48,494 nt of DNA, from NCBI RefSeq assembly GCF_021028975.2, contig NC_059437.1, positions 37,401,507-37,450,000 on the forward strand, read 5' to 3'. Positions 6,372-48,151 of the stretch are shown here, piece by piece. The position numbers and the translations under genes were made by a program. The stretch is from Sphaerodactylus townsendi (taxonomy: Eukaryota). The notes beneath the pieces are model-generated. The model saw nothing but the letters and a program-made list of their open reading frames with translations. It searched no databases and had not been told where the DNA came from. Each line of letters opens with the position of its first letter. Positions within the stretch are counted from its first letter, which is position 1.

Positions 6372-8099
6372 ATCAGTCATTAATAATTTCTTTGCTGGCT
6401 GTGCTTGCTTCGCTTATACCCAATGATATCAAGACATTAAATATGATCTAATGATCCAGGCAAATGCATTCTCTATGTCACTTGCTGTATTTTCTCCCCT
6501 CTGTTTCACTTGCTGTATTTTCTGTAACGCTGTCCCATTCCTTGCAATGAGATTTAAAGTAAAATATATGAGACAGTTTGATATTATTTCCCAACTTTCA
6601 TTTCTTTCAGAAACTAGACCAAAAATAGCTGATGCTTAATATATATTAATTTGCATTGAGGTTTGTGTATTTTTAAACTGATTAAAGTCGGTCACTTATG
6701 ATTCTTGATGAAGTTAAATGGATTCATTTTAGTTGAATACAAAAATAAATCTATGGACTTCAGAGACCAGTTGATCTGGAAGAAATAGCTGCTTCAGAGG
6801 ATACACTATAAAGTCTTGGAAAAACTGTAACATTACATCTCATCTCTGCTGAGTTCTTTCTCCACCACAAACTCAGCTCTCTCCAGATATTGCTCCTGAA
6901 CCTACAGGAATTTCTCCAGCCAAAGATGACAACCTTATTTCCAAGAGGGAGGAAAAGAATGCTGAGGTTTAAATGCCTGCTGTTTGTGATATTCCTGACG
7001 GAAGTACACAAAGGGCAGAGCAGTTTAAGAGCACTCCGTGTACTTGTTTTTTAGTGCCCTACAATAACCACAGGAATGTCATAATCAGTGGTCAAATAGT
7101 CCCTCATTTGAAGCTTGAGACATACAAGGAATGGTGGTGGTCATTGTCTTCCCTGACCTTCCTTAATGATACCATCGGATACAGTTTTTGGCATCACTGG
7201 TACTTGTAAAATGAAAAACACTAGATTCCAAGAATGTCTGCAAGTCCTGCCTTCTGATCTTGATGTGTTCAGGCAGTCAGTGGTTGTTCAGTGCTGGGGG
7301 AAAGGCATTATGCACATATTCAGATGCACATTATTGGTTAATACTTTGGGAAGACTGAAGCCGGGAATTAAAAGCCGTTTCCAGGACTGACCCGCTTAAA
7401 TTCTTCCTCCATTCAACCTGCTGCAGGATCCCAGGGGTGCAGGTGCTTTCTAAGTGCTCTACTAAGGGCTGGTTGAACTTAGAAACCAGATGCTGACAAC
7501 TGGCCAAGTCTCATATATCATTAGCAGTGCAAGAGATTTTCCCAGGCTCTGATTTCAGAATTCACATAAAGCAAATCATTTGAGACACTGATTTCTACTT
7601 GCTGTTGGCATCTACATTTGTAATTACGAATGGCCCAATGGCAAATGCTCTCCATCATGGCCTGGCTAAATTAATATAGTAAGAGACATCCAGAAGAACA
7701 CTATGACATTACATTTTAGCTCACCAATCAAGCCCCAAACCTGAATTGGCAACACAGTTTCACTCCCTAATTTCCAGTTGCGTATTCCTTGTCATATTGG
7801 CATTACTCACTGCTTGCATCTTGGTTGACCGTTAAGGAGTTGAATTTCCCTGACCCTGATTCATGACAATAACAATCACTGGTGTGGGCAAAGAAACTTC
7901 TTACTGATGGGAAGGAGCTATGTGACAAGTTCCGACTTGGGCTTCAATTGCAGGCCTGGCAGGAGCTGCAAAGTTGATTGAAATCTCCAAGTCAGATCCA
8001 AGTGTGAAAGATATAAAAGGGGGAGACTAAATCAAGTCAAGAGATATGTTTGTGTGATTAAAGTTATTTTCCCACAACAGTTTGATCCTGACAGAAGTC

Positions 8100-8295
8100 A
8101 GTTCCAGGTAGCCAGCTCAAGGTTGACTCACCCTTTTATCCTTCCAAGGTTGGTAAAGTGGGGGTAAAGCGTAGATGACTGGGGAAGGCAATGACAGACC
8201 ACCCTGTGAACATGATCTACCGAGTAAATGTTGTGAAGTGGCATCACCTCTTGGGTCAGTGATGACTTGGTGCTTGCACAGAGGACTACCTTTAT
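8100..8295 (+). mobile_element. Sauria SINE-like 3' portion
   Basis: GCTCAAGGTTGACTCA..CCTTCCAAGGTTGGTAAA..GGGGAAGGCAATG..GACTACCTTTA, recalled as the Sauria SINE core and tail. Confidence 0.65.
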
Positions 8296-8889
8296 CTTCA
8301 ATATACTGTAATTATATTGTCCTTTGTGCAGTGATTTGCCTTTTATCTAACCCATTGAACTAATATGAGCACCTTTAACTGTAACCATGCTTTTATTAGC
8401 CTATCAGTTCTCTGCTATTTACCCCAAGGAAAAGAATGAGGAAAGCCACACAACACAAATAGAGCTAATCTTTATATTAGCCCCAGTCTGAAGGCACATA
8501 TTTGTTTTAATGCACTGTTTGATCCATGAACCCAGCTTTGGCAGGGAATTGCTAGGATTATATGTTTTAGTGGATTAAGATCTGGGTTGAGCTTCTGTTT
8601 TCCTTCCTATTTCCTGGTATTTAATCTTGGGCGTGGCCAGAGATGGGAGCTTTTTGATGTGAACCAAACAGTAAAGCTCTTGTCTCTTGGCCCATAACCC
8701 ATGGTTCAAAAGCTGTGGTCATGAGTGCGACCGCCCAGTGCATCTAAGGGTAGTCCAGAATGCAATGTACTGGAATTTTTTGGGTTTTCCTGTATTTTTA
8801 CGCTGTAGACCACTTCGCAACCCCACTGAAGAGGAAAGAGGGATAGACTATACCTATGTAATGGGTCATCTTCTTCTAGGGCTGTATTC

Positions 8890-9180
8890 CCCTTGAGGGG
8901 GTTAGCACTGACATTTTCTTCACCGAATAGCTCAATTTTGGGCATTTTCCGGGGTAAGGTTGACAGCACGCATGTCTTCAGCAATGCTGTCCATCCACTG
9001 TTTCTTTGGCCCTCCTCACAGGCGGTGGCCTCCAGGGTCAAAGTTTAGGGCCATTTTTGCAAAAGAAGTCTCCTCCTGGCGCATAATGTGCCAGTACCAC
9101 CGGAGCCATGCTTTCCTCACTTTCTTTGTAACTGGTGTAATTCCAAGTCTTTGTATGACTTTGTTTGTAACATGATCAGA
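8890..9180 (-). mobile_element. Degenerate RTE-clade LINE, 3' end of ORF
   Basis: Minus strand reads ..LRWYWHIMRQEETSFAKMAL..GGHRL*GGPKKQWMDSIAEDM.., resembling the RTE C-terminal RLRWxGHVxR...RGRPKKRWxD motif, with stops. Confidence 0.65.
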
Positions 9181-9233
9181 AAGAGTACCTATGCAATGGG
9201 TGAGGCTATGTATTTTACATGATGATGACTCTT

Positions 9234-9548
9234 GAAGAAGAAGAAGAAAAAGAGTTTGGATTTATATCCCCCCTTTCTCTCCTGCAGGAGACTCAAAGGG
9301 GCTTACAATCTCCTTGCCCTTCCCCCCTCACAACAAACACCCTGTGAGAGTGTCAGGTGCAGGAGCTGAGAGAGCTCCGAGAGGCTGTAGACTAGCCCAA
9401 GGTCACCCACAGCTGGTGTGTGTGGGAGTGTACAGGCTAATCTGAATTCCCCAGATAAGCCTCCACAGCTCAGGCGGCAGAGCGGAGAATCAAACCTGGT
9501 TCCTCCAGATTAGATACACAAGCTCTTAACCTCCTACGCCACTGCTGC
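9234..9548 (-). mobile_element. Full-length tRNA-derived SINE with (TTC)n tail
   Basis: High similarity to copies at 11424-11709 and 40275-40561; A and B boxes on the minus strand. Confidence 0.8.
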
Positions 9549-9804
9549 ATTCCTTAACCTATGATGTCATCCAAACATTGCATCAGGCTCCCAGTTGCAC
9601 TCCTTGGAGTAAGGGATGGAGCAATAGAATGCAGGGGAATGACCCATCAGTTTTCATTTTTGATGGTACTGCAAGAAAATATATTGCTTGTCAAAGCGAT
9701 ATTGAATAAATGGTTTTGGCAAGTGGAAGATGAGAATTTAGGGGGTGGTGTATAAGTTTTTTCCCATCTAACTCAAAGCAGAGTATTCAGTGCTTCTCTT
9801 ACAG

Positions 9805-12800
9805 ATGATAAGGGACCATTATGTGCTGCTATTGCTATGTGGATTCACATAAATGTAAGCAGGAACTGCCCTCTGAAAACTCTGCAGCCTACCGCTCACA
9901 GTGATGGGGATTCAGATTGTTGGAGTTCAAATATTCATGTTTAACTATGATTGCATCAAGGTACCAGTGCTAATGCCTATAATATTTATTGATAACCAGT
10001 TCCTCTGAATGGCATGTGGGCACTGGCTCTGCACTGTAAACAGCAACAGTACTGAAGCATGATAATTGGCTGGAGAGGGACCACAGCAGATAAAAGATTG
10101 GGGCAGAAACTAGGACCTCTGTTGCAAGCCAGGCTCTAGAACTGAATGAGCAGGGCCTATCAGGGCAACCAATACAAGGAGGACTGTAAGAGCAAAAGTC
10201 AAGACTGGATGCTGCGAGTAAGGAAAACCAGAGCATCAACCACAGAGAACCAAGGGACAAAATGGAAGAATCAGGGAAATACATGCAGAGGCCACCAAGC
10301 TCGATCTTGAGCCAAATGCCAGGTGAGCTTTTGCTCCGAGCTTATTTTTATCCAGACCAGACCAGGAGGAACACGCTATTGGAGAGCTGGAGGTATGAAG
10401 CCACAATGATGCCTAGAAAAATAATAGCCTTCCATTTGTCATCCATTCCGTACCACAAGCAGGAGACCACTAGGAGACAATGCCCTTATTCGGGTCATTC
10501 ATATCCAGCTAAGTAGGTGAAAATTTTCTTGTCCAAGACTAAAACCTGCATGAGTGCTGGTTCCTCAGTGGGGGGTGATGTCTGCATTATTCTACCCACC
10601 TTGAGTCCATATTTGTTCTCCTTGTGATATACCTAGATTCGCTGATGAGTATATAAATATAACACTTTTTTGCTCTAGTTTCAGATTGCGAACAGGTGCC
10701 TGGAGCATTGAAACAGATCGAAGCTAGCAATGGACAGGTCTTTGGTGTGAACAGTGCTGGCAATATTTACACCTTGTATGGAAGCACATGGTCCCAGCTG
10801 CCAGGGGCACTGACCCATGTCACAACTGGTCCTTCTGGTGTCTGGGGTGTGAACTCAAACCATAACATCTACAGGCTCGTGGGTGGCAACTGGGTGCTGG
10901 TTACAGGTATTGTAAGACAGCTGATCCTAGTTGTATGGATGTGTAAGAAATAGAAACAAAAGGAGAAAGAACGGCATGCACAAAAAGAAATGTTTGTCAT
11001 TTTTCAGTATATGTTTTATCCCCAAAAGGACTTTTGTGGTGTCAGGAATAGTTCTCCGTACTCAGCTTGGAAATCATTTTAAACTCCCTTGCCTAAGGGT
11101 AAATTAGTGGGACCACACAGTCTTATTTTGTGCACTGTCTTGTTTGATCATATGAGACCTCAGCAAATGAAGAGAAATGGCTAGACTGACTTGTTTGAAT
11201 GTTTCATCATTCTTGCCCTGTTGGCATCTCATGAAAATTCTGATGCACCAAAAGGGACATACAACCATTGTCTTCCTTCCAGTGTACATTGATGGTGTAG
11301 CTGGAACTCAAGCAGTCATGTGAACTGTCCCACTGTATGCTAGCAGGCCTTGTGCTGGAGAAGCCCTTCTCCACATCTGGGAGCCCTCCTGAACCATTTT
11401 CTTTTTAGCCAAGCACCCAATGAAGGAAGAAGAATTTGGATTTATGTCCCTGCTTTCTCTCCTGTAAGGAGACTCAAAGGGGCTCACAACCTCCTTTCTC
11501 TTCCCCACCCCACAACAAAAACCCTGTGAGGTGGGTGGGGCTGAGAGAGCTCCAAAGAACTGTGGCTAGCCCAAGGTCACCCAGCTGGCACGTGTTGGAG
11601 TGCACAAGCTAATCTGGTTCACCAGATAAGCCTCCACAGCTCAAGTGGCAGAGCGGGGAATCAAACCCAGATTAGAGTGCACCTGCTTTTAACCACTACA
11701 CCACGCTGGAATGGAACTGTTTTCAGCATTTTGTGTATGGTTCTAGTTATGCTTAATTTTGATCAGTTCATAAGATCAACCCAGTGAACAGCAATTGAAA
11801 GAGAGGGTCTCTTGATGGTTGGGGAAATTAAACTTACAAATAAAGTTGTTGAGAACTGAAACATAGGAATGCTCTCACTGACTGGTCAAGACCCAGGAGG
11901 GAATACCAGATCTCAATAACAGGACCCAGAGCTGAAATTAGGATATTTAGACCATCTTAGAACAGAGCTGAGGAGAATTCTTTGCTTGAGAATTTGGTTG
12001 CTTCAGAAAGGGAACCGTATGGAGCTAAACAACATTGTTTTATCTTAGAATATGCCAGGAGTAAGGATCAGTCTAGATGGGCTTAGAATGGATGCATTTT
12101 CCCTTTGAATGCTATCATGGTTTTTTTTTAATATAAAATACTCCTTTATAACTTAATTATGTAGTGTACTATATTTAAGGCTTTTAAAAATGTTTAGTTA
12201 AAAAGTGGCTTTCTTGTATAAGTAGCTGTCTCTGAAATTTTGGTCTCACCTAATCCCACAACAGTAATGAGGGACTTCCTCCCGCATACTACTAGAGGAT
12301 CTGACCAAAACAGTTTAAAAACCTTTGCCTGTACAAAACTTTGTAGCATCAGAATTTATCTTATTAAAGGTGATTTATAACCTTTTATTCTGATAACACA
12401 AAAGAGTAGGGAGTAAAGTTCAGTTCCTGAACTATTTAATCAGACAGAACATCAATAGAACCTTTTATCTTCTGCTGAGAAAAGATTCTTTTTATTGAGC
12501 AAGACAGAAAAAATACTGGCACGAAAAGTTAACCATAAAATTACGGTGAAGATAAATACTACAATTATTAAAGTTCCCACAATTGTTAATCATATTATAG
12601 CCAGTAATAGGTTTTAAAAGCCTCCTCAAGTTTCAGCTTTTGTCTCCCTGGTTTTAGGGATTATCAAAAAACCCAAATTATCTCACCAAGAATTCTTTTG
12701 AGACTTCCATCCAGAGAAATCTGATTTCCTCATCACAGGAGTGCATATTTATATCAACATCATTTGCTAAATCTGATCTATTGTAACCCTATGGTCATAT

Positions 12801-15785
12801 CTAGATAACTGATTGGTTCATAACTAGATATGAGATAATTAACATAAGTGCAAATAATCCAGGCAGCATGTGCATATGAGTTACTTACACCTGATATGGT
12901 AAGACAAGAAGGTTAATCTCAACTCTTAGCCTCTATTTAAAAAAACAATATTTTTTCTATCTGTTTCAACTGACTGTCCAAGATGACAACGGCTCTTAGC
13001 AACAGAGTTCATTGACAGTGGAGAAGTCTGTGAACTCTTAATTTTCAAACTGAGCAAGGGAAGAGTCATGATATCACAGCTATGCTACACAGCCATACTA
13101 TTTTTATCTGGTGTTTGTAAGTTGATTGACTCCTATAATGATATAAAGAAAAGGCTGTTGGGTAGAGGCAACCAAGAGAAAAAAAAATCGACTTCTGGCT
13201 GGTGTTGGAGCAAAGGACACTGGAGGACCTGGAAGCAGAAGCTGCTTTGGCTTGTCTTCCCTTTCTCATGGAGCAGGCTCTCACACAGACCTTTTAAGGG
13301 AGGCATAAAATTGCAGTCATGGTGACCCTGTAGGGCAGTGGTTCTCAACCTTCTTAATGCCACAACCCTTTAATACAGTTCCTCATGTTGTGGTGACCCC
13401 CAACCCTAACATTTATCCATTTTACAGATGGAGAACACTGATGCAGAGAGTCTTAGGCGACCCCTGTGAAAGGGTCGTTTGACCCTCAAAGGGGTCACGA
13501 CCCACAGGTTGAGAACCACTGCTGTAGGGTTTTCAATCCAAGAGATGTTCAGAGGTGGGTTCCCATTGCTTGCTTTGGCGTTTCAACCCTGATATTCCTT
13601 GGTGGTTCCTCATCCAATTACTAACCGGGGCTGATCCTGCGTAGCTTCCAAGATCTGATGAGATCAAGCTAGCCCAGGCTATCCAAGTCAAGTCACAGAC
13701 CATATTACACATACCAATTGTACGTTTTTGGAGGAACCTGGCTGAATTCACAATCTGAAACTCTACACACAGCTAATCATCTGGAAGTGCTGTTTCCCTG
13801 CGACTTCACTGTAAAACTCTATTGTAATCATTGTAAAACACGTATTGCAGTGTTCTGTGAAATGTGTGCTCCTATAAAACTAAGTGTGTGAAAGGAAGGG
13901 CTTGCTTTATTAATTCTCATGCATTAAGTTTCCAACATGTGCAGTAGATGGCAGTTCCACCATTGCATGATTAAAAGCCACAGGACTGACTGTACACGCA
14001 CCAGCATTCCTGATTGCACAATTAATCCAAATCCCAATTGCCTCATGTGCCTCCAGTAGGATGGTTGCCTGGCGCATGACGTTTGCTTACTTGACATTTG
14101 CCAAAACCAAAACTCATTCTGCTTATCATGCTAAATGTGACTTAATTCTTACCGGTAATTGATGCATTTTGACAGACTTCTTAAAAATCCTAGATCTTTT
14201 CACAACTTTTCAGGTTTGCTCAAACAGATAGATGCAGGTGGAAGCCAGTTTGTTGTTGGAGTCAATATGAACGATGACATCTATTGCCTACCCAAATCTT
14301 CAACCATCACTGCTGATGGCAGCTCAGCATTGCCATGGATCCACATTGAAGGAAAACTCAAATACTATGTTTGTGGGCCTCGGGGTTGTTGGGGAGTTAA
14401 CTCAGCTGATGCCATCTATTATCGGCATGATGTTACCCCAGATTCCTGTGCTGGATCCAGGTGGCAGAATGTACCTGGCGCACTTTCCATGATTGAGGTT
14501 GGCACAGAAGGAAATGTGTATGGAGTAAACAGCGCTGGAAACATTTATCGCAGGTACCACTAAGAGGACTTTTGCCTGGAAGAGTCTCTCTCCTTTGAAA
14601 GCCTAGTGCCAATCGTGGGAGGCTGTAGCATGTCTTGAACCAGGATAACAAAACAACAAGATAACTTTTAAGGGATTTCAACTTGTTAGTAACCCAGCAC
14701 CTGTGATTCAAGTGGCATTTGAGTACAAGTCACTGAGTTTGGTTTCAATCTCAAACAGGACCATCTCAGAGTCAATCACCACATTATATACAAACAAGAT
14801 GTATTTTAAAATGAACAAAGCTTCCCGTGGCAGGAACCTGGAGAGGAGGTCCATCAGGGAGGGACGAGCCAGTATGGTATACTGGTTAGAAGCCAGGACT
14901 AGGTTTGAATTTCTATGCTGCCATGGAAATTCAGTAGATGACCTTGGCCCAGCTTAACCCAGCTGGGCCAGTAGATGACCTTGGCCTAGCCTAACTCACA
15001 GGATTGCTGTTGTGAGCCTGGCAGGGGAAGGGTGGTAAAAATATCTAAGAAAATAAATAGACAAGTAGAAAACAATGTTGTAATCCTCTCAGGATCATCA
15101 CTGGGGTATAATAAATAAGGCTGCTAGATCATTTTCCCACAGAGCATTTTTCCACCTAAAATATCAAATGAAGGGCAAAGAAATAACAATTTGATATATT
15201 TGTACCTGAATGTTCTTCAACACAGCAAAGGCAACTGGGAAGGAGGAGAGATTTTGAGCAGAAAAACAGCAATCAGGGGAAAGCTCCTCTTAAGCTCTTC
15301 TTCTTCCTCCAGTTATTTGCACTTTTTTTGTTTACAAATAAATCAATGGTGGAAAATTATCTGCAATTAAACGTAATGTGTGGTTTTGGAACACTGGAAC
15401 ACCTATCTTGAGGAGCCACTTCAAACCCTCAGCCATGTTTGGATCACTTTTGCATCAGATTTGTCTGATGGGGTGAAGCTTTGCCTGTCTAGCAATTTTT
15501 ATTTTCTCCTGGCTTCTGTACTTGTCTTTCACCAACAAGTAAGGTAACACTGAGTTAGGCCCACTCCTTAAATGAACCTCAAGAATGCTTATTTTCAAAC
15601 AGAGCTAAATGAACAGCTGTCCTATTACCTTTCCTTCCAGGGATGGAATCACCAAAGAAAATCCGATTGGAACTACTTGGACACAAATAGTCAAAAAACC
15701 TGGAACGGCCAAACACATTTCCTTTGACCTGGGCCAGCTATTTGTTATCACTACGAAAGACTCCATCTTCAGATACAAAGTGTGA
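9805..15785 (+). CDS. Fish-egg lectin-like protein, copy 2; signal-peptide exon disrupted (signal-less variant or young pseudogene)
   Basis: Exons 10679-10906, 14214-14553 and 15641-15785 are open and have the same lengths as in copy 1 (228/340/145 nt). The exon-1 homologue 9805-9854 reads MIRDHYVLLLLCGFT* (TAA at 9850). A second ATG at 9821 is in frame with exon 2 (248 aa). AATAAA at 15932. Confidence 0.85.
11424..11709 (-). mobile_element. tRNA-derived SINE, same family as 9234-9548
   Basis: Direct sequence similarity. Confidence 0.8.
13310..13690 (-). mobile_element. 5S-rRNA-derived SINE, interrupted by the SPIN-like MITE
   Basis: Minus-strand GATCTCATCAGATCTTGGAAGCTACGCAGG..GGTTAGTAATTGGATG resembles the 5S internal promoter region; a related copy lies at 46295-46495. 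Confidence 0.7.
13336..13521. mobile_element. SPIN/URR1-like non-autonomous hAT MITE
   Basis: TIR CAGTGGTTCTCAACCT; perfect 8-bp TSD CTGTAGGG (13328-13335 and 13522-13529); both ends match the recalled URR1/SPIN_NA consensus. Confidence 0.85.
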
Positions 15786-25318: not shown

Positions 25319-25879
25319 ATGAATACAGTCTTTGGAGCCATCCCCCTCCTATTCAGGCATCCGTCTGCCTATGGCCTGTCCCGGATCACCAGCAGTCTGT
25401 TCCTCAGCAATGGGGAAGCCGCCAACAACAAGCTTCTCCTCTACGCCAACCGGATCACCACTGTTATCAATGTCTCCGTGGAGGTAGTCAACACCTATTT
25501 CCCAGACATTTCTTACATCCAGGTTCCTGTCCTCGACATCCCCTCAGCTCGCCTTTATGACTTCTTCGACCCTGTCGCTGATAAGATTCACGCTGTTGAA
25601 TTAAATCAAGGCCGCACTTTGGTGCACTGTGCTGCAGGCGTCAGCCGCTCCGCTGCCCTTTGCATGGCCTTCCTGATGAAGTACCATTCAATGTACCTGG
25701 CCAACGCGTATGCCTGGGTCAAGGCCTGCCGTCCCATCATCCGTCCCAACATCGGCTTCTGGCAACAGCTCATTCAGTATGAGCAAAAACTCTTTGGGAA
25801 AACCAGCGTCTCGATGATCCGGTCTGCACTGGGGGTGATTCCTGATCTCTACCAAAATGAGGTAATGATTGGCTTCTAG
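25319..25879 (+). CDS. DUSP18: Dual specificity protein phosphatase 18 (atypical DUSP, single coding exon), 186 aa
   Basis: Catalytic motif VHCAAGVSRSA, plus GLSRITSSLFLSNG and RPIIRPNIGFWQQL motifs. Splice acceptor at ~25263; AATAAA at 26028. Synteny with SLC35E4 favours DUSP18 over DUSP14/21. Confidence 0.93.
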   Translation: MNTVFGAIPLLFRHPSAYGLSRITSSLFLSNGEAANNKLLLYANRITTVINVSVEVVNTYFPDISYIQVPVLDIPSARLYDFFDPVADKIHAVELNQGRTLVHCAAGVSRSAALCMAFLMKYHSMYLANAYAWVKACRPIIRPNIGFWQQLIQYEQKLFGKTSVSMIRSALGVIPDLYQNEVMIGF

Positions 25880-27228: not shown

Positions 27229-27729
27229 GTAGTCCCATACTCTTGAACAGTTCCTATCGATGGTGCCTGCATAAGAGTTCCACCAGGGATGTGGGTTGGG
27301 TCCCCAGGGGTCTGTTCACCAGTCACCCCTTAGCAGCATTCCAGATCTGCCGTTTGAAGTGGATTCTTCTCCTTGTCTTATGGTAAGACTGCCTGTGAGT
27401 ACTCAAGTTTTTGCAAATAGATTCTGAACGCAGATAGGAATACTTTCTCTGGAATACAAGTGTGCTTTATTAGGTATATTTTCAAGTTTCTTATACAAAT
27501 CATCTTACAAAAAACCGCACAAGGAGGTTTCTAGTAACTTGTTTCAGCTTTTCACAAAGTCTTTGAGTCCCCAAAGGGACCTTTCTCAGCTATTTCAAAG
27601 TCTCTTTCCTTCACCTGAGGATTCTGAGATTCTTCTTCGTCATAAGCTTGCCATCATAATGGAAGCTACACATGCAGTCTCACCTTCCAGAAAAGGGACG
27701 ACTACAGTCACCTGGGAAAGGAAAGGGGA

Positions 27730-30700
27730 TCACTTCTGTCTTGGCAAGGTAGAATCCACACAGTTCAACCAGAAATTGGCACAGCTAACATGATAACAGC
27801 TACCTTGGTATATAACAGAGTCAGAATTTCCTGTCGGCACCTGCCAAAATAAATTAACAATTAATTGTAGAAGTCTTGCTCAGTGCTGATAGATGGCCAG
27901 CTTTTTTTTCTACTCCAGAAAGGTCCCAATAGGCAGTCTGTATTTAGACCAGAACAGAGTGCAACAAAACCCCACCCCCATCCCCTGTTTCACCTCAGGC
28001 AGAGTTCAGTGGAACTCTGTTTTCTTTGGGGATGCCCACCAAACTTATGTTTGCCATTCTGGAAATTCTTTTGGATTATGGAACCCCCAGTTGTAGCAGT
28101 AATAGTGTTTTATTTACAATCAATAGATTAGGGCTTCCACTTTTAACTTGGATTGTGAGATTAATTGCTGATTTTAATTTGCCTGATTTTAAATCTGCAC
28201 ATTTCCAATTTGTTTTTTATTTTTAGAATGTATATTTTGTCTTTTAAACTTGTTCAAAAAATTTAAATTCTTTTAACGTTTGACTGTGAATCTACTGATT
28301 GTAAATAAAATACTACTACTTCTACAGTTGTGACAGCAAATACACGGGAAGGGTTTAGCACAGGGGTCCCCAAACTACAGCCCGGGGGCCAAATGTGGCC
28401 CCCTGAAGGCATTTATCCGGCCCGCCAGGCATGGCGGTGATGGCTCCATTCATGTGCAGTGGGGGCTCGAGGGAGAGGAGGAACTGGCCCCAACAGCTGT
28501 TGATTGCAGTTACATGATGGCACCCCCAAATCTCCATGAATTTTCTGACCCAGAGTTGGAAACCTTACATGTGGCAAAGCCTGCTCCGCCCTTCCCTCTC
28601 AGCTACTCCATGTGTTGCTCTCAGGCTTTCTGTTCCGCCTCACTCCCATTGGCATCAGCCAGGCTGGCGAATCGCTCGCTGGCTGCTAGGGAGGAAAGAA
28701 CCCAGGAAGATACCTAATACTGGGTTAGATGGAATGTTTCATTGGGAAAGTTCTGCTTTTTTTTTTTTTTTTACAGGGGAAGGTATTCCACAGCCTCCCC
28801 AACAATATTTGGAGCCCACCCTGTACTTGACATATTTTGGTCACTGTTCTTAAAATAGACCATGACAGAAAGGCTGAAAGGTGAAATCAAACATTTTACA
28901 ATCATTTGTGCATAGGAATTTGTTCATAGTTTTTTTTAGTCCGGCCCTCCAACAGTCTGAGGGACAGTGAACTGGCCCCCTGTTTAAAAAGTTTGGGGAC
29001 CCCTGGTTTAGCAGCTCTGGATTACCAGTACAGCTGACCTCTGCCCATACATAGCTGAAAAACATTACACAGTGTCAGCATAGTTTGTTTCCATGGCACA
29101 CCAGCTGCAGCAGACACACACGAATCTGCCTTCTACTGAATGAGTCTATCAAGTCAGTACTGTCAATTCTGATTGGTAGCAGCTGTCCAGGATTGCAGGT
29201 CTTTCATATCACCTACTACCTGGTCCTTGTAACTAGAGATGCTAGGAATTGAACTTGGCCCTTCTGTATGCAAAACAGATGCTCCACCATTAAGCCACAT
29301 CTACTTCCCTCAGCTGTTCAAACCTGTGGTGAGGACCATCACATATCAGCTAGTCTGTGTTAGTTCCAATTCTATTCTGGCACAAATGGGATCAGAACTG
29401 GGCATTTTGCAACAAAATAATTAAGAAACATCTCCCCCTCTTTTTTTGTTGTTGTCAAGTCACAGCTGATTGATGGAGACCCTAGGTTTTTTCAAGGCAA
29501 GAGACATTCATCCTGTCTCTATAACAGCATTAATCCAAACACTATCTCATGCATGAGATTTCTTTGGACAGTATTTTGATGGGGCAATAGGAAATCAATA
29601 TGCTGTGTTTTTGATAATTACCTCTGATTCTCGCCTCACCTCCATTAGGCAAACCCCGCAGACTTGACTCAGGGCCGGGTTAGGACCAGATAGATGAGTA
29701 CTGCTTTCTACTGATGACTCCAAAAGCTTCAAGTCCCATTGGCAGAGGCAAAAGAGGGGCAGGGAGGAAACAGATATTAAGCCTTGCCTTTTCTCCTACA
29801 AAGCCAGTTCTAGGGACATTATTATCAAGGCTTCAAGTCCAATGCAATGACAGGTTGGGGAACCGCTGCCATTACAACATCAGAGACCCCACCAAGTGTT
29901 TTAAGTGCACTCAGGAGAAGTATTGCACCAATTATCATATGTTGGCATTCCAATTGAAAGAAGAACTGTAGAAATGGGAAAGGCTTGGATCTCAGAAAGC
30001 CATATCATATTTTAGCGACACCCTTTGGGAGATCCTATGAAGCCGACATGCTTTTCAACCCTCCAGCCCTGTGTTGTCTACCCTAATTGGCAACAAATCT
30101 CCAAGGTCTCAGGCAGAGAAACATCTTCACCGGCCTTAATGCTTGAGATCATTTTAAAATGGAGATGGCAAAAGTGGAGACTGGGATCTTGTGCATGAAG
30201 CAAGAGCCTTGGATGACTCACAGGGCTCCATTGTGGAGTGACAGAAAAGGGGGCCGGCTTTGGTTCCCATTCTGCTAACAGATGCATACCGGACAAAGGA
30301 ACATTGTGCACACAGAATGAAAGAGCGGCAGCAATGCTGGAATTACTGATGGGGAGTAAGGATCTGGAAAGCATACTTGTAAAGCCCACCCACCTATTGC
30401 CCACTCTCCCAAGAATGGCAAGCAAAAAGTGGGCTGCTTATATGCTATCATTCCCCTTTCAGCTGTTCCACATTCTCCCCCAGGCATGTTAGAAGCTTTG
30501 GGGAATGGGAGAGAGCACATCCTGCAGATGTATCATTATGTGACCCATTTAATATGTCCTTGCCCGAAGATCTATTAATAAAAAAGGTCTTTGGCTTAGA
30601 AAGTGCCTGGTTTGCCTACTATCTCCTGTGACGTTTACACTCACAGACTAGAATATCTTACCAGCATTTGGAGCAGGGGGTGACCAAAGGCAAGAAAGGA

Positions 30701-33700
30701 CAGTAAATTATTCCAGGCTAAGTCCACCTCTCGTAATGTATGTCGAAGCAATTCACTTGCTGGCTGCCGAGTCTTTACCCCCTCTTCCAAGCGCTTAGAC
30801 ACCCGGTACACCTCAAACAAGCCTGCATGTGAGAACAAACTGCAAGGAGTACTGCATCCTGGCCAAATCAGAGAGTAGATTTGCTGAGTACAGGGGGCTG
30901 TGGCATTTAAAACTGCAGGTATAATTCTCTCCTTTGTAAAAAACGGGGCAATTCACTCCGCTATCTTAAGTGCTGTGCATTCCTTCATCAGTTTGCTATC
31001 TGTTTACAATATTTAAAATATAATTTGCACTTCTCACCCTTCCCCATTCATTTCCTCTCCAATATCGTATAACGTATTCTCACACACCATTTCTGCAACA
31101 TATGACAGAGAATCCACACCAGCACTAAAGTGTGATTCCCCCCAAATAGTTGCATCATGTCCTCCAGCTGTCACTGCCCTTAGACGCCACCTTTTGGCAT
31201 CTTCCTGAAGGCCCACGTTGTCCAGAACTGAAAAGCTTTTAATACCCCAGAAGGAACCAATGCAGATAGACATGAAGCACAATTCTACTTTAGGTGTGAT
31301 TCTGTTGGTAAGGTGTCAATGGCAGTTGCCTGGATGGTGCTCTCTCTACTCCTTTCTTCCCAAGTCTAGAAATTTTTAAGGGGTCAAAGCAGACAATAGC
31401 CAAGTTCTAATCAAGACTAGACCCAGTTCTGCCTATTATCAAGATTTGATTTTCACAGATTTCACACAGCAGTGGGCAAAGAACTCAGCAGCTAGGAAAG
31501 CCCAAGTTTGGGTCGTCTATCCCTCATGAATGCATCGACTGAGTGTTAACCCTGTGTCACAGCTACAGCATCCGGTGACGACTTTTCTAGGTGCCATTGA
31601 TATCAACAGAGCTTGCGCAGCAAAACTTTTTGGTGGACTGGGCCCTACACGTTCAGTCTGCCCATAGCTCATGCTGTTCCCCTTTATGGTGTACAAAAGC
31701 CAGCAGCTGAAGAAATCATGTCATCTAGTCTCCTGATGGTGTTGCTTCTGTCAGTTCCATCATGTATAAACAAAATGTTGCCTTCTTGTAATTGAATCAG
31801 AATTCAGACTGTTGACACAAACCTGCTCATACACGGATCATGAGGAGAAGTTCCAGGTAAGAGATGTCAGAGAACACATTCCAGAGCAAGGGACTGATGA
31901 GAGACCATCACATCCAGACTTTATTATAAATTATATGCACAAATCCATACCCAACATATATGCAGTCCCTGGTTTGGATAGCAGCACCTCACTGCACACT
32001 GATGGATTGCTTACACCTGCAAGGATTTCATTCGCCTTTCCAATTACCTGCAGAGGGTACAGGAGAGGCACATGAACAGAGGGGGGGGGGTGCCATCTCT
32101 GCAAGTCAGAGTTATTTTTCCCATTAACCCTAGAGAATATCCACAGCTAGCAACATAAACACATATTTCAAAGTCCTTGTGAGCCTTCAGTGCTTACTCC
32201 AGTCTTGTCAGTCTGATGTACTTTGGAAATTTCATGCTCAGGACATCATTTTCAACCATATAATGGCCCAATTTGGATCAGGGCCATGGAGTAAGTGGAA
32301 TGTAAGTCTTCTTCTCCACATCATTTCCCCAACCAGGAACAACCCAAGCACTGCTATTTTTCCTCACTGGAGAAATTTGCATGCGCTGGTGGGCTATATT
32401 TCCCCCCAATGGGCTCCAGGGTAAAAGATGAGGGGGCAAAGTCCCCCACCCTGAGAAGCCTTGATCCGATCTGATCCGAAGTGCCTGGCCGAATACACAT
32501 AGATGATAACTTTTTGCAAATGCCACAGCAACCAGTCAGTGATCCACCAAAAACTGTCCATTTTACTACTGTATTACAATCTATAGTCTACTCCTTTATG
32601 ATAGATGTTGCGTTTGGTACATCACTTGCTAACTAGCTTTGACTATTAAAAAGATTGACTCTTTAAATATTACAGATAAAGGTCTTGGGGAGGGGGGGGA
32701 AGACTTGGCTGCATCTCTCAGAGATGCACAAATGAAACAGATCTCTGAGGAGGGCTTTTGGGGGCTCTCTTGGGTGGTTTCAGTGTCCTCCACAGACACT
32801 GGGGATAGTCCAGGAGGAGAACTATTATTCTCTCCTTGACTCTTTCCCCTCACAACACAAACAACACCCTATCCTTTACACTCGTTGGTAACCCAAATCC
32901 CAGAAAATAGAACAAACTATGCAAAACACATGCAACACTGCCAGTAAAAGAACATGAAGCCCATGAGGAGTGAAAGTAAACAAGAGGATGACGCAAAAAT
33001 AAGCAACTCTGTACAATTACTAGGCCGAACCAGCAGAGGGCGTTAAGATTACATACAGGTTACACTGGGAAACTTCTCATTCACAGCCATGCAAGGGATT
33101 TATAATTAAATAAACAAACAAACCAAAGATCCTAACAGATAAATACATGTTGAATAATTGGTTTCCAAGCTAGCTCAATCTGCTGTATATTATTTTTAAA
33201 TGGAGTAAGCTTGTAGTGTGAGAGCGTATTAGCTTCTCAATCCACTGGGCCTTTGGAGAACTGGCAAACTAATCTTGAACATTATCCTAGAGGGCTTTAT
33301 AGCCAAGTAGTAAAATTCCATGAAACATCAAGCAAGAAGGTCAAAAAGGGTGCAAGGGAGGGAAATCAGTGAGGAGAGCAGGTATTAAGGGCAGGAACAA
33401 TCATGGTGATTCTGGGGAGCTGGGTGGAGCCCCCATATCCCTGCCACACCATAGCTGCCCCCCCCCAGAGCAAACCGAGGAGTGCCCCTTGCCCTATATG
33501 AGGTGGGAGAAGCTGCCGCCAGAAGAAGCCAGCTGCCCAAGCCCCAAATGGGGTGGGTCAAGTAGGGCTGCCAATTCTGGGTGGGGAAATTCCTGGAGAT
33601 TTGGGGTGGAGCCTGGGGGACAGCAGTGTTTGGAGAGAAAAGGGACTTCAGCGAAATATAGTGCCATAGAATTCACCTTACAAATCAGCCATTTTCTCCA

Positions 33701-35590
33701 GGGGAACTGACCTCTGTGGTCTGGAGATCAACAGCATTTCCTGAAAGCTTCCAGACCACATCTGGAGGTTGGCAACCCTTGGAAAGTTTCAGTGGCTGCA
33801 CGAGTCCGGTACCTGAGCCCCAGACAAGGTGTGTGTGAGTAGCTGTCTAGAAGTCAGATATGCCTGAGCTCCAGACTGGATAGGCATGGGTGGTGGCAGG
33901 AGTCTGCTCTTCTTTCTCCGTCTATTTCAGAAGGGCATGGGTGGGTGGGACTGTTCCTGGCATTGGCCTATGGCAGCTGCCCTATTGCCCATTGGCTAAG
34001 ACCAGCTGTGGTCAGGAGCTTACAGGCATTTGCAAACTTCATTGGAGAGCAGCAGGTTTCAATCCCTCAGCTGAGAGGGGGGAGATAATAAAAAAAAAAA
34101 CCTAATCTAATTACTTGACAAAGGGGATATAAATTAATAAAACTACAGATCTCACTTGAAAGAGATCTAAAGTAGGTCCTGAGAGAGGATGTAGTAAGCT
34201 CTGTATCTCTCACCTGAACCCAACAGTAGCCATAGGACAATATTCTGCCTCCTCCCATGAGGTTATTTTAGTATGTGTGACAAATGAAAAGAGAACAAGA
34301 ACATAAGAACAAGCCAGCTGGATCAGACCAGAGTCCATCTAGTCCAGCTCTCTGCTACTCGCAGTGGCCCACCAGGTGCCTTTGGGAGCTCACATGCAGG
34401 ATGTGAAAGCAAGGGCCTTCTGCGGCTGTTGCTCCCGAGCACCTGGACTGCCAAGCACCTGGGCTGCCAAGAGATAACAAGAAGAGCAGTTTGGTGATAG
34501 TTTAAACAGAGATAAGCTGGAGAGAGAGACCAGGGGAAGAAAAGGGAGTAGGGTTGCCAACTGCCTGGAGATAAAATAGTTAGGTCCTTTAATAGAGGCT
34601 TAATGAGACTGTTTATACAGGGTGATTTATTTACCTCTGTGCCATGAAAATTTCCAGCTGCCCATATCCCCCCATTAAGTCTCCAATAATGGGACAGGAC
34701 ATTTTCCCCCAGGCTGTAGGCAATCCTAAAAGGCAGACATCTTAAAGGATAAAAAAGTGCCATATTTACTCCAATGCAAGATGAGGTTTTTTCCCCCAAA
34801 TATGCCATCCAAACAAAAATACCTCAAAAGGGGAAACCATGTTTGCATACAAGTTACAGTTATGTTCAATTACATTTGAGGGGAGGGCATATAACTTTCT
34901 TAGGTGGCCATCTTATATTTAGGATTGCCCTCCTTTTGAGTAAATACCATAGCCAGCAGTGCAATGGAAATGTATAGACTTGGTGTGGATCTACATTATT
35001 TGCCTAGTCCTTTTGAGAAACCTTTTTTGTTACAGAACAGATGCTGGAAGGGAATGTCACACATAGGGTTATCTTTCCCCTCGTATCAATTTCCCACTGA
35101 AAACTACCAGTTGCTTTTATCCCACCTAGGGGAAAAGTATAGGTACCTGTCTTTTTCACCAGCAGCAATAAACCAAGGTAACTGCCAGGACCAGTTTAAG
35201 GTATTTTGACACCCAAAGTATACTCATTACCTGCCATGCTGGCATGGATGAGATCCATCCCCTTCTTACACTACTAATGACCAGAAGATTGCCAAGGAGT
35301 ATCTTAAGGTTGTCAACCTCCAGGCGGGACCTGGAGATCTTCCACTTTTATAACTGATCTCCAGACTACAGATATTAGTTCCCCATGACAAAAATGGCTG
35401 CTTGGGGGGCGGGGGGTGGACTTTATGGCATTGAATGCTGCTGAAGTCCCTGCTCTTCCCAAGCACCACCATCTCTAGGTTCCACCAAATCTCCAGGTAT
35501 AGCCCAACCCAGAGTTGACAATCCCAAAGGACCCTTTACCTTATGGATCTGCTGCAGGCATTGTATCAGATGGGCTGTCTCAGAGGTCAT
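27730..35590 (-). CDS. Uncharacterised synergin-gamma C-terminal-domain-like protein, 174 aa, 5 coding exons
   Basis: Exons 35590-35540, 32047-31951, 30822-30662, 29726-29622 and 27840-27730 (525 nt, all GT-AG, phases 0/1/0/0). Protein MTSETAHLIQCLQQIHK-VIGKANEILAGVSNPSVCSEVLLSKPGTAYMLG-LFEVYRVSKRLEEGV...VDLAWNNLLSFL...-SQVCGVCLMEV...-YQGSCYHVSCANFWLNCVDSTLPRQK. It is collinear with the recalled SYNRG C-terminus (VIKKANDTL..VCTEV..EVYRVTKRVELG..WNNLIGF..ACGVCLLNV..YHASCANFWINCV). Minus-strand AATAAA at 27471-27466. Confidence 0.85.
28361..29005. mobile_element. OposCharlie1 (OC1)-like non-autonomous hAT element in the last intron of the SYNRG-like gene
   Basis: TIR CAGGGGTCCCCAAACT; perfect TSD GTTTAGCA; 3' end GTGCATAGGAATTTGTTCATAG..GGCCCTCCAACAGTCTGAGGGACAGTGAACTGGCCCCCTGTTTAAAAAG matches recalled OC1. 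Confidence 0.82.
34290..34455 (-). mobile_element. CR1-type 3' end fragment
   Basis: AAGAACATAAGAAC..CTGGATCAGACCAGAGTCCATCTAGTCCAGC; an older related copy lies at ~24110-24290. Confidence 0.65.
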
Positions 35591-35645
35591 CACTCAGACT
35601 TAGTCGTCTGGAAACAAGAAGAAAGAGTAATATGTGGGGGTAAGA

Positions 35646-45244: not shown

Positions 45245-48151
45245 TTATTCTTGCTTGTCTCGCCTGCCCAATGAACGCCAGCAGTTGGCTATGCGGTCAC
45301 AGTGATGGTACATGAAGACCCCCGAGAGGGTGAGGGCAATGCCCACATAGCCGAGCAAGGTCAGATGGCTCCCGAAGAGCACGTGAGAGAGCAGCAGGTT
45401 CCCCACAATGTTGAAGTTCCCAAGGATGTGGATGGTGAGGGCAGAAGTCAGAGAGATGACGCAGAAGCTGGACAGGTTGTAGAGCACCGAGCCCAGACAG
45501 CTGAACAGGATGCACAGCCAGAGGCTGCTGCTGGAGGCCAACGTGCCATCCCAGGAGGGGCCGACTTCCAGCAAGAGGGCCGCTGTGAAGAGGATATAGA
45601 AACTGGGCAAGGAGGTCAGGCACAGCAGAGTCGGACAGTCCATTCGTTCCTCCTGGAGCAGGGTACCTGTGGACAAGACCAGAAGAGTATAGTGATTAGA
45701 ACAGGGGTGTCCAACCCTGGCCCTCCAGATGCTCATGGACTACAATTCCAGTCTGCTCCTGCTGGCACTGTCAGGGGCTGATGGGAATTGTAGTCCACGA
45801 ACATCTGTAAGACCAGGATTAGACACCCTTGGATTACAGCTTTTGAATAGGACAGAGACATCTGGTTTCAAACCCCTGCTTACGTATTCCTGGACTCGGG
45901 GGGGGGGGGCTCTACATGGTTCTACAATTCACAAGCACAATTCACAAGCACAATTCACACCCACAGTGACTCAATGAAGCAGGCAGGCAGTCTCTCCTCC
46001 CTGTCCTAACACTAGAGGCATAGCAAGGCAGGAAAGCGCCCGGTGCACCGGTGTGTTCTCCGTCCCCGCCCCACCACACCTCCACCCCGCTCCGGAACAT
46101 CCCTGCCACGCCCCCAGAACGCCCTCGCCACGCCCCCACAGGGGTGCGTGCCCGGTGCATCGCACATCCCCCTGTCCCCTTGGGAGCTACGCCTCTGCCT
46201 AGCATACCTTGCTAGGTTGCTGTGAGGATAACATGGGGGAGGAGTAGGCCATGGGTGCTACCATGAGCTCTCTGCAGGAAGAGAAATAAAGTTCTGTTGA
46301 GCTGCAACGACTCATGGTGACCCCTTCCATAGGGCATTCCAGGCAAGAGGGAAGCAGAAGTGTTCTGCCATTGCCTTCCTCTGAGTAGCAACCCCAGTCT
46401 TCCTTGGTGGTCTCCCATCCAAATACTAACCGTGGACAATCCTGCTTAGCTTCCATGCTCTCAAGAGATGGAGGCTAAGCTGGGCTATTCAGGCTGTTCC
46501 CTTAGAGGAAGGGTGGGGAAAGATCAGGGTGGGGCAAAGATCGATAGGAAGACTGCTAGGGACCGGTTCTGAGGACCCAAGTGGGTACATGTCCTACCAA
46601 AATCATGCTAAGTCTGGGGCAGGAGAGGGGGAAAGGAGGTTATTTTCACAAGACACACTGTGTTGGAATGCACACAACGCAGGGCTGCAGCTTCTCCATA
46701 AACTTTAAAAATAGGGAACAAACTGAGCACACTCCCTTCCCAAGACAACAGACAGGTGATGCATTAAGTATTTCTCCCTGCAGTTTTACAGGAATCATTA
46801 CCCTTCTTTCTATGTCATAATGAGACGAAAAGAAGTGATTCAAACCCTGGAGGTAGAAATGTAAAATGGGGGAGAGGAAACAGGCTGCTCACCCTCTGCG
46901 CTAAAATTTCCGGCCTTCAGAACTACTCAAACCTGCCTGAACTATGGACTGGGTCCAACCAGCTTTTCCACTGATGAAAAAGGAAACGGGGTCTCCTTTG
47001 ACTACCTCGAAGGGTATGTTGTGGGTTACAGGACCTGTACAGACAAAAGCCGTGTGAAATGGCGGGGGTAGTAGCAAGCAGGGGAATTAAGTGAGGCTGA
47101 GTGGGAAAAGCTGGCTAAATCCAACCCTTTGAGAATTATTTATTTTATTTTTGCTATTGATAGTCTGTCTTTCTCGCTTGGACTCAAGGCAGATTATACG
47201 GAGTGAGTCAATGCAATTGACAGATGGGCCACACAATCAATTAAGCAAAATCTCCTGTTTGCATAATTAGCATTTGTTACAGTCCATAATTTATTCAAAC
47301 TCATTACAGGCACTGCAGCTCCGCCCTTATAATTGCACTCCTCTGGTCTCTGAGACGTGACCGGGCCTTGCCACATTCTTTCAAACGTTAAGGACTAGAA
47401 ACCTGTTCCCTTTTCAAAATGAAAGCTGAGATTCTGCACATGCGATACTTCAGAAGAGCCAAAACACACTCACAGACACACACACACTCACACGGAGCCT
47501 CGGGAACGACTTACTCTGCTGAATGGATTTCAGCCCTCGGAGGAAGGTGGCAGCAAAGAGGAAGCAGCATCCGGCTTGATCAAACTGCACCTCTCCGATG
47601 ATGCTCAAGGAGGCACCCAAGCAAATGGGCCCCATAGCTGCATACTGCAGCGGGTGGTGGTGCTTCCCCAGTAGCACTTTGGAGAGGGTCAGAGTGAAGA
47701 GCGGCGTGGTGGTGTAGACCATCTGAGCAAAGTCCAGCTGGACGTAGTTGAGGCCCAAGTTCCCAAAAGCTACACTGGTGCAGAAAGTCAAGCTCAGCAG
47801 TAAAACCCGGGCTTTGGCCTCAGGACCGAGGGTAGGGTTTCCTGTCCCTCCAGCCCGGAGTTTGGCCAAAGGTCTGCCCACCACTACCGCTGACAGCATG
47901 TGCAGGGATGACAGCAGCACAGGGTACCGGAAATTGTGCACAGCGAAGATCCACTTGTTGAGGCTGGACATGGTGGTGCCAGTGGCCAGCCAGACAAGCA
48001 CGGTGGCCACGAGGGGAAGAGCATGCAGAGATGGAGGGGACGGCCTCTGCCCCCCTTGCTGCCCCGGATCTGGCTTCCAAGGAGAGCGCGGCCATGCTCC
48101 ATGGGGAGAGTTCATTCCTGCTTCATTTCTCCTCTGAGAGGGCAGGCACAT
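45245..48151 (-). CDS. SLC35E4: Solute carrier family 35 member E4, 352 aa, 2 coding exons
   Basis: Exons 48151-47515 and 45666-45245, joined in phase 1 (KSIQQ-S-TLLQEER). Motifs VWLATGTTMSSLNKWIF, AFGNLGLNYVQLDFAQMVYTTTPLFT and SVLYNLSSF..TSALTIHILGN. Two-exon structure as in mammals. Confidence 0.95.
45702..45831. mobile_element. Palindromic hAT MITE, diverged copy, in the SLC35E4 intron
   Basis: Shares CCAGATG.TCATGGACTACAATTCC..GGGAATTGTAGTCCA with the other MITE copies. Confidence 0.8.
46013..46197. mobile_element. GC-rich short hAT-like element
   Basis: Termini TAGAGGCATAGC / GCTACGCCTCTG; imperfect 8-bp TSD CCTAACAC/CCTAGCAT. Confidence 0.55.
46295..46495 (-). mobile_element. 5S-rRNA-derived SINE
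   Basis: Minus strand reads GGAAGCTAAGCAGG..GGTTAGTATTTGGATGGGAGACCACCAAGGAA. Confidence 0.7.

What the first reader, a model, noticed from the sequence alone, without database searches (positions are those of the whole stretch)
27730..35607. Stand-alone synergin-gamma C-terminal domain gene between DUSP18 and SLC35E4
Seen: five small exons, nearly invisible in the ORF track, splice into an intact 174-aa ORF. An in-frame TGA two codons before the ATG means it cannot simply be the tail of a longer ORF through this exon. Knowledge: SYNRG is a ~1300-aa AP-1 accessory protein (aftiphilin/p200-HEATR5/gamma-synergin complex) at another locus, and I recall no coding gene between human DUSP18 and SLC35E4. 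Inference: this is an unnamed paralogue keeping only the C-terminal module (no EH domain, no gamma-ear-binding motifs), possibly lost in humans. It could act as an alternative adaptor or a competitor of SYNRG.
Basis: partly seen in the sequence, partly recalled or inferred. Interest (0 to 1): 0.8.

Follow-up and report, generated by a model that had tools for sequence, protein, structure and literature searches.

The report
Stand-alone synergin-gamma C-terminal domain gene
A real, conserved five-exon gecko gene encodes a 174-residue protein equivalent to only the last five exons of the trafficking protein gamma-synergin; databases auto-name it "synergin gamma-like", it has never been studied, and no annotated bird or mammal protein matches it.

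Summary
On the minus strand, five GT-AG exons (35590-35540, 32047-31951, 30822-30662, 29726-29622, 27840-27730) join into an intact 174-codon ORF. A TGA sits in frame at 35596-35594, two codons before the ATG.

The window encodes two RefSeq "synergin gamma-like" isoforms of Sphaerodactylus townsendi exactly (168 and 139 aa). The gene model is therefore already in databases, but I found no paper on it.

Orthologues of 130-310 aa occur in squamates, turtles, amphibians, sharks, rays, chimaera and sturgeon. No bird or mammal appears among the best 120 hits. Synteny (SLC35E4, this gene, DUSP18-like on the opposite strand) holds in geckos and a turtle, and partly in Xenopus. dN/dS among geckos is 0.27-0.30.

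Its four introns match the last four introns of a frog SYNRG in position and phase. The protein equals the SYNRG_C domain: a three-helix bundle plus a RING-like knuckle with invariant C-x2-C...H-x2-C. It has no EH domain and no gamma-ear motifs.

A role as competitor or alternative subunit for SYNRG's partners is inferred, not shown. No RNA data exist here for this species.

The parts
35540..35590 (-). Coding exon 1: ATG plus 16 codons, donor GTAAAG
   Evidence: Homologous to the 49-nt SYNRG exon (+2 carried nt = 17 codons).
35594..35610 (-). Short 5' leader: acceptor-like tract ...ttgtttccag (AG at 35609-35608) and in-frame TGA at 35596-35594. All three frames entering at 35607 hit a stop within 9 codons.
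   Evidence: A pyrimidine tract plus AG lies 5-17 nt before the ATG in Gekko, Eublepharis, Emydura and Xenopus too.
31951..32047 (-). Coding exon 2, 97 nt, ends in phase 1
   Evidence: Same length and phase as the SYNRG exon in L007. Aligns to turtle.
30662..30822 (-). Coding exon 3, 161 nt, ends in phase 0
29622..29726 (-). Coding exon 4, 105 nt, encoding the linker and the C-x2-C knuckle. An alternative donor after 29640 gives the 168-aa isoform. Skipping the whole exon gives the 139-aa isoform.
27730..27840 (-). Coding exon 5: 36 codons plus TGA, encoding the beta-hairpin and helix with Y-H-x2-C-A-N-F-W
25319..25879 (+). Neighbour: single-exon dual-specificity phosphatase ORF (DUSP18-like), convergent, 1.85 kb from the stop codon
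   Evidence: DSPc 6e-35. Same arrangement in L003, L004, L005 and L006.
45245..48151 (-). Neighbour: SLC35E4-like gene on the same strand. Its two ORF pieces are 48151-47450 and 45736-45245. It ends 9.7 kb upstream of the ATG.
   Evidence: TPT/EamA. Same order in L003, L004 and L006.

Best explanation
SHOWN: This is an intact gene under purifying selection that encodes a 174-aa protein (with 168- and 139-aa isoforms). The protein is a stand-alone copy of the SYNRG_C domain, the C-terminal ~190 residues of gamma-synergin. It arose by DNA-level duplication, because all four introns sit at the positions and phases of the last four SYNRG introns. It is at least as old as jawed vertebrates and has stayed between SLC35E4 and DUSP18 in geckos and a turtle; in Xenopus it lies beside the DSPc gene, and no SLC35E4-like gene fell within the 10 kb fetched upstream. 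The predicted fold is a spectrin/Habc-like three-helix bundle followed by a small beta-hairpin-plus-helix module. That module carries four residues invariant across 168 animal sequences (C126, C129, H149, C152 in P0002 numbering). They align with zinc site 1 of RING-H2 fingers; the second RING zinc site is absent. INFERRED (about 0.35): the protein binds whatever the C-terminus of SYNRG binds, most plausibly the aftiphilin/HEATR5 complex. Because it lacks the EH domain and the gamma-adaptin-ear motifs, it would occupy that site without linking to AP-1. That would make it a competitor or an alternative, AP-1-uncoupled subunit, much as CLBA1 relates to aftiphilin.
For: The exact spliced match to RefSeq proteins and the intact 174-codon ORF are. 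The word search gave 136 hits, and the small proteins among them span squamates to chimaera. Exon sizes are conserved at 51/97/161/105-111/111+ nt. Against turtle only exons align. dN/dS is 0.27-0.30 at dS 0.30-0.38, with Fisher p from 3e-7 to 1e-5. Two ~1.2-kb contigs hold the ORF uninterrupted, with in-frame stops 23-24 codons upstream; one aligns to the turtle genome in five blocks equal to the five exons. Identity to frog SYNRG is 46% over 157 residues. Intron positions and phases match. Of 30 columns at least 80% conserved in animal SYNRG_C, 23 keep the same residue in the small clade. The C2HC residues are invariant. The AF2 model has pLDDT 86 and pTM 0.82. For the C-terminal module alone, the listed top Foldseek rows are almost all RING, LIM or PHD zinc fingers. 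Weak profile hits fall on RING-H2 domains. No gamma-ear, NPF or clathrin motifs are present. CLBA1 is a precedent, and how SYNRG joins HEATR5B is unknown (PMC10798858). The gamma-adaptin-binding region and EH domain map outside the C-terminus (PMC2169493).
Against: No RNA run of this species was available, so expression in this gecko rests on the RefSeq isoform models. No binding partner of the SYNRG_C domain is documented in the papers I could read. AlphaFold2 gave the authors of PMC10798858 no confident HEATR5-synergin interface. Zinc binding is inferred from sequence and a predicted fold, and every RING/LIM match has E > 0.05. The tree does not place the small clade as sister of vertebrate SYNRG, although that placement is not rejected (AU p 0.23). 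The small clade evolves several-fold faster than SYNRG_C, which could mean a changed partner.
Confidence: 0.85

Rival explanations
1. It is not an independent gene but an alternative 3' module of the SLC35E4 transcription unit. Transcripts would start at the SLC35E4 promoter and splice into the acceptor just before the ATG, so the small ORF would be expressed from read-through or bicistronic mRNAs.
For: The gene lies on the same strand, 9.7 kb downstream of SLC35E4. An AG acceptor 5-17 nt before the ATG is conserved in five genomes, so an upstream exon probably exists. No CpG island lies between the two genes. One ray model of this protein is filed as 'SLC35E4 isoform X6'.
Against: All three frames entering at 35607 stop within 9 codons, so no fusion protein is possible. 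The 5' end of mRNA-like contig L001 matches turtle intergenic DNA 2.9 kb before the ATG, not SLC35E4 exons, and its upstream ORF has no TPT similarity. Even if true, this changes the promoter, not the protein.
Confidence: 0.15
2. It is a decaying partial duplicate of SYNRG, a truncated pseudogene that happens to keep an open frame in this species.
For: It lacks the 5' four-fifths of the parent gene. It is absent from annotated bird and mammal proteomes. No RNA data exist for this gecko.
Against: The frame and identical exon structure are intact from frog to gecko. Orthologues reach cartilaginous fishes. dN/dS is 0.27-0.30 and significantly below 1. Only exons are conserved against turtle. Spliced transcript contigs exist in two other species. 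The family's invariant residues are all kept.
Confidence: 0.03
3. The C-terminal module is a working RING finger and the protein is a small E3 ubiquitin ligase or E2-binding factor, unrelated to AP-1 traffic.
For: The motif C-x2-C...Y-H-x2-C-x3-W-L aligns with RING-H2 domains of RLIM, RNF13 and EL5. RING domains are prominent among the weak structural matches.
Against: Only four of the eight RING zinc ligands exist. The C3 and H4 positions are variable, and the protein ends before C7-x2-C8. All matches have E between 0.06 and 1. The same module sits at the end of SYNRG, which has no reported ligase activity.
Confidence: 0.05

Closest known systems
Gamma-synergin (SYNRG), C-terminal domain (Pfam PF25999 SYNRG_C)
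   Same: Homologous over the whole length: 46% identity to frog SYNRG. Same four intron positions and phases. Same invariant C2HC, Trp and Pro residues. The domain is C-terminal in both.
   Different: It has no spectrin-like N-terminal domain, no EH domain and no DFGDF-type gamma-ear motifs. Length is 174 aa against 1000-1500 aa. It forms a separate clade with several-fold longer branches. It sits at a different locus, next to SLC35E4 and DUSP18.
CLBA1, the short aftiphilin-like protein (PMC10798858)
   Same: Both are short proteins that resemble only the complex-assembly part of a large AP-1 accessory protein. Both could define alternative HEATR5 complexes. This is an analogy only.
   Different: There is no sequence relation. 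CLBA1's binding to HEATR5A/B is at least predicted by AlphaFold2, and nothing comparable exists for this protein. CLBA1 is present in humans.
RING-H2 zinc fingers (RLIM, RNF13, EL5)
   Same: The C-x2-C knuckle, beta-hairpin and helix starting H-x2-C-x3-W-L correspond to zinc site 1 of the cross-brace.
   Different: The second zinc site is missing, similarity is below significance, and no ligase role is implied.

Membership tests
SYNRG_C domain family (PF25999) | Significant profile match over the whole domain | tested here: met
   Precomputed PF25999 on P0002 and P0001, which the window encodes exactly. A profile of the small proteins retrieves SYNRG C-termini at E 1e-50 to 1e-76. The local Pfam copy lacks this model, so hmmscan was silent.
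SYNRG_C domain family (PF25999) | Invariant core residues (C-x2-C, Y-H-x2-C-A-N-F-W, W86, P165) | tested here: met
   C126 is C in all 92 short and 76 long sequences. C129, H149 and C152 depart only by gapped rows and a single H-to-C change. 23 of 30 family-conserved columns keep the same residue.
SYNRG_C domain family (PF25999) | Gene structure shared with the 3' end of SYNRG | tested here: met
   Exons are 51/97/161/105/111 nt, against 49(+2)/97/149/111/132 nt in Hymenochirus SYNRG, with identical phases.
Gamma-synergin orthologue (SYNRG proper) | EH domain and N-terminal spectrin-like domain | tested here: not met
   The protein begins at the C-terminal domain. Pfam finds no EH domain, while frog SYNRG carries PF26996, EH and PF25999.
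Gamma-synergin orthologue (SYNRG proper) | Gamma-adaptin ear-binding motifs (DFGDF type; region 518-786 in PMC2169493) | tested here: not met
   No motif in the window protein or five orthologues; 3-4 in frog SYNRG.
Gamma-synergin orthologue (SYNRG proper) | Groups with vertebrate SYNRG in a tree | tested here: not met
   Separate clades, SH-aLRT 96-100 each.
RING finger | Eight zinc ligands in cross-brace order | tested here: not met
   Only C1, C2, H5 and C6 equivalents are conserved. C3 and H4 positions vary, and C7-x2-C8 is absent.
RING finger | Zinc binding and E2 binding | not testable with these tools
   Needs metal analysis and biochemistry.
Aftiphilin/HEATR5B/gamma-synergin complex subunit | Physical association with aftiphilin or HEATR5A/B | not testable with these tools
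   No multimer prediction or interaction data were available. The literature gives no mapping of the SYNRG C-terminus.

The most novel reading that the evidence does not exclude
The small protein is a natural, lineage-restricted antagonist or alternative subunit of the aftiphilin/HEATR5 complex. It would use the SYNRG_C module, a three-helix bundle plus a one-zinc half-RING, to occupy gamma-synergin's docking site without coupling to AP-1. That would identify SYNRG_C as the so-far unmapped assembly domain of gamma-synergin. Its apparent loss in birds and mammals would mean a layer of AP-1/HEATR5 regulation that the usual model organisms lack.
Probability: 0.3. Interest if true: 0.65.

Novelty: new variant of a known kind. 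Interest (0 to 1): 0.5.

Why it matters
How gamma-synergin joins the aftiphilin/HEATR5B complex is unknown, and the function of its most conserved part, the C-terminal domain, is unassigned in the papers I could read. A small protein consisting of that domain alone has been kept for more than 400 million years. That gives a compact tool to find the domain's partner and to test the predicted zinc site. It also suggests that non-mammalian vertebrates run an extra variant of this trafficking machinery. Practically, the gene has no human orthologue-based name, so it sits in databases as "synergin gamma-like" LOC models, and in one ray as an SLC35E4 isoform. It deserves its own name.

Tried and rejected
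1. Pfam scans of single exon-bearing ORFs and of whole orthologues gave nothing, because the local Pfam copy lacks PF25999. I used the precomputed domain calls and my own profile search instead.

2. My first ab initio exon chain (31204-31038, 30839-30662, 29795-29640) looked protein-like but was wrong. Orthologous proteins gave the true exons.

3. RNA evidence for this species was not obtainable: no RNA run holds the stretch. Read laying on the two DNA runs showed only genomic contigs. Of a relative's 43 substitutions in one contig only 17 were listed, none in an exon, which is too few to count.

4. The AU test on the 107-row tree did not finish in two 300-s runs. I replaced it with a 38-row tree.

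5. Look-ups for Lacerta P0005 and Alosa SYNRG P0124 were not on record. The shark locus came without DNA.

6. Hirst et al. 2005 is not held.

7. Whole-model Foldseek gave no significant match. The VIA matches (Z 7-8) are generic three-helix bundles.

8. The L001 upstream ORF is not SLC35E4.

9. The joined 174-aa model was built only inside scripts from window.fa. It was never sent to a search or folding tool. P0002, a database protein that the window encodes exactly, stood in for it.
Full report
**Observation**

The gene lies on the minus strand. Reading the DNA and mapping database proteins onto it gives five coding exons:
- exon 1: 35590-35540
- exon 2: 32047-31951
- exon 3: 30822-30662
- exon 4: 29726-29622
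- exon 5: 27840-27730

Joined inside a script, they give 525 nt, which is 174 codons plus a single terminal stop. Every intron is GT...AG. The leader reads cag|ACGACTAAGTCTGAG TGA GTG ATG. All three frames entering at 35607 meet a stop within nine codons. P0002, a database protein that the window encodes exactly, was used instead.

**Identity of the window and the gene model**

A word search with the stop-free stretch around exon 3 returned "synergin gamma-like" proteins of squamates. Two are from Sphaerodactylus townsendi: P0002 (168 aa, isoform X2) and P0001 (139 aa, isoform X3). Both are reproduced exactly by splicing the window.
- This longer exon 4 (105 nt) is also the form found in Gekko, Eublepharis and Emydura.
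- The 139-aa isoform skips exon 4.

The model is therefore already in RefSeq and UniProt. However, no paper in the library contains "synergin gamma-like", PF25999 or "synergin C-terminal".

**Distribution and synteny**

A profile of five squamate proteins found 136 proteins, and all but one of the 120 listed carry the precomputed PF25999 (SYNRG_C) call. The small proteins among them, 130-310 aa, come from squamates, turtles, frogs, a salamander, caecilians, sharks, rays, a chimaera and sturgeons. A few listed hits, including several fish sequences, group instead with true SYNRG in the tree, and one is a crustacean protein. No bird or mammal appears among the 120 listed.

In Eublepharis, Gekko and the turtle Emydura the order is: TPT-family gene (SLC35E4-like), SYNRG_C gene, then a DSPc gene on the opposite strand. 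In Xenopus tropicalis the gene lies next to the DSPc gene, inside the range of an oxysterol-binding-protein gene.

The window shows the same order. The DSPc ORF is at 25319-25879 (+), and the TPT/EamA pieces are at 48151-47450 and 45736-45245 (-). I did not test the names DUSP18 and SLC35E4 beyond domain content and this synteny.

**Selection**

- Exon lengths are conserved from frog to gecko: 51/97/161/105-111/111-162 nt.
- Against the turtle locus, only SLC35E4, DUSP18 and three exons of this gene align. Gecko-gecko alignments cover introns too.
- Nei-Gojobori dN/dS among three geckos is 0.27-0.30 at dS 0.30-0.38. Synonymous changes exceed non-synonymous ones with Fisher p from 3e-7 to 1e-5.

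**Expression**

No RNA run holds this stretch. The four runs found are genomic, and laying two of them showed only DNA contigs. Indirect evidence comes from other species:
- Two Logan contigs of about 1.2 kb carry the whole ORF uninterrupted. L001 is nearest to turtle and L002 is nearest to Ambystoma. Both have in-frame stops 23-24 codons upstream.
- L001 aligns to the Emydura genome in five separate blocks that equal the five exons. It is therefore a spliced transcript.

A pyrimidine tract plus AG lies 5-17 nt before the ATG in all five genomes, so an upstream non-coding exon is likely. I could not locate it in the window.

**Relation to SYNRG**

An HMM search of 1.84 billion representatives gave 548 clusters. 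In these the match ends at the last residue (median 0 residues after it). Those looked up are named synergin gamma in toad, shad, lamprey, amphioxus, scallop, snail, nemertean and tunicate.

The last exons of Hymenochirus SYNRG (L007) are 49 nt (plus 2 carried nt, making 17 codons), 97, 149, 111 and 132 nt. Their phases are 0, 1, 0, 0. This is the same pattern as 51, 97, 161, 105, 111 nt in the window. The small gene therefore equals the last five exons of SYNRG, copied as genomic DNA. Protein identity is 46% over 157 residues.

In trees:
- The small proteins form one clade (SH-aLRT 96-99) whose inner order follows vertebrate phylogeny.
- Vertebrate SYNRG forms another clade with much shorter branches.
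- A sister relation of the two is not recovered, but it is not rejected either (AU p 0.23).

An origin in the vertebrate genome duplications is plausible from what is known of the regions involved. I did not test it.

**Protein anatomy**

AlphaFold2 on a 70-sequence alignment gives pLDDT 86 and pTM 0.82:
- Residues 3-112 form five helices, three of them long, packed as a three-helix bundle. It matches spectrin repeats and syntaxin Habc domains at Z 7-8, which is generic.
- A disordered linker spans residues 111-119.
- A strand, a beta-hairpin and a helix span residues 124-160.

C126, C129, H149 and C152 are effectively invariant in 92 short and 76 long sequences from across animals: C126 never varies, and the other three depart only by gapped rows and one H-to-C change. 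C147 is not conserved. The motif aligns with C1, C2, H5 and C6 of RING-H2 fingers (RLIM, RNF13, EL5; E 0.06-0.4).

The module was also modelled alone, using a turtle-like orthologue with an alignment (pLDDT 73). The listed top Foldseek rows are almost entirely RING, LIM and PHD fingers, though none is significant.

I read this as a single-zinc, RING-derived treble-clef knuckle. This is an inference. The exon-4-skipped isoform would lack the C-x2-C half of it.

**Function**

Of 30 columns conserved in animal SYNRG_C, 23 keep the same residue in the small clade. The module's core, and probably its binding surface, is therefore retained. The protein has no gamma-ear, NPF or clathrin-box motifs, while frog SYNRG has three or four DFGDF-type motifs.

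What the papers say:
- The original paper places the EH domain at 295-377 and gamma-adaptin binding at 518-786, outside the C-terminus (PMC2169493).
- A 2024 study states that how HEATR5 proteins bind their cofactors is unknown, and that AlphaFold2 found no confident HEATR5-synergin interface.
- The same study describes CLBA1 as a short aftiphilin-like protein predicted to bind HEATR5A/B (PMC10798858).

By analogy I propose, at about 0.35, that this protein occupies SYNRG's docking site without linking to AP-1.

**Verdict**

The gene is real and ancient. It is already auto-annotated, but it has no proper name and no study. Interest is moderate. It is a domain-only variant of a known protein, and it could open the unmapped C-terminal domain of gamma-synergin to experiment.

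Noticed in passing
window 28300-29100 and 33500-33700: Intronic stretches whose k-mer depth in genomic runs is 1e5-1e6, against about 90 elsewhere, with many short joints. They are high-copy interspersed repeats inside introns 4 and 1.
   Followed up: no
window 29622-29726 (exon 4): In-frame skipping of exon 4 (139-aa isoform) is annotated in Sphaerodactylus, Podarcis, Naja and Salvator. It removes the linker and the invariant C-x2-C, so it would abolish the predicted zinc site. This may be a regulated isoform or annotation noise.
   Followed up: partly
window 35594-35610; L003, L004, L005, L006 just before position 10001: A splice acceptor is conserved 5-17 nt upstream of the ATG in five species, implying an unmapped 5' non-coding exon. 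In contig L001 the AG is replaced by AC and the transcript reads through.
   Followed up: partly
P0029 (Narcine bancroftii, 191 aa): This orthologue of the small protein is filed in RefSeq as 'solute carrier family 35 member E4 isoform X6'. That hints at transcripts shared with SLC35E4, or at a merged gene model.
   Followed up: no
L001:2-595: A 197-codon ORF lies in the GC-rich (0.71) 5' part of the mRNA-like contig. It has no Pfam hit and no similarity to SLC35E4, so it is probably a chance ORF in a long 5' UTR.
   Followed up: partly
L003:23492-25741 and L004:24803-26830: In Eublepharis and Emydura a DUF5528 (PF17666) gene follows the DSPc gene. In this window other notes of the scan place lectin genes on the far side of the phosphatase gene (1160-15785).
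   Followed up: no
L007 (Hymenochirus SYNRG): Frog SYNRG carries a Pfam 'Spectrin-like_SYNRG' domain (PF26996) near its N-terminus. The helical half of SYNRG_C also looks spectrin-repeat-like in the model, so an internal duplication within SYNRG is possible.
   Followed up: no
run X4 (organism B) on window 27700-33699: A related species' genomic contigs cover the gene at about 1.5% divergence. None of the listed differences lies in an exon, but the list was truncated.
   Followed up: partly
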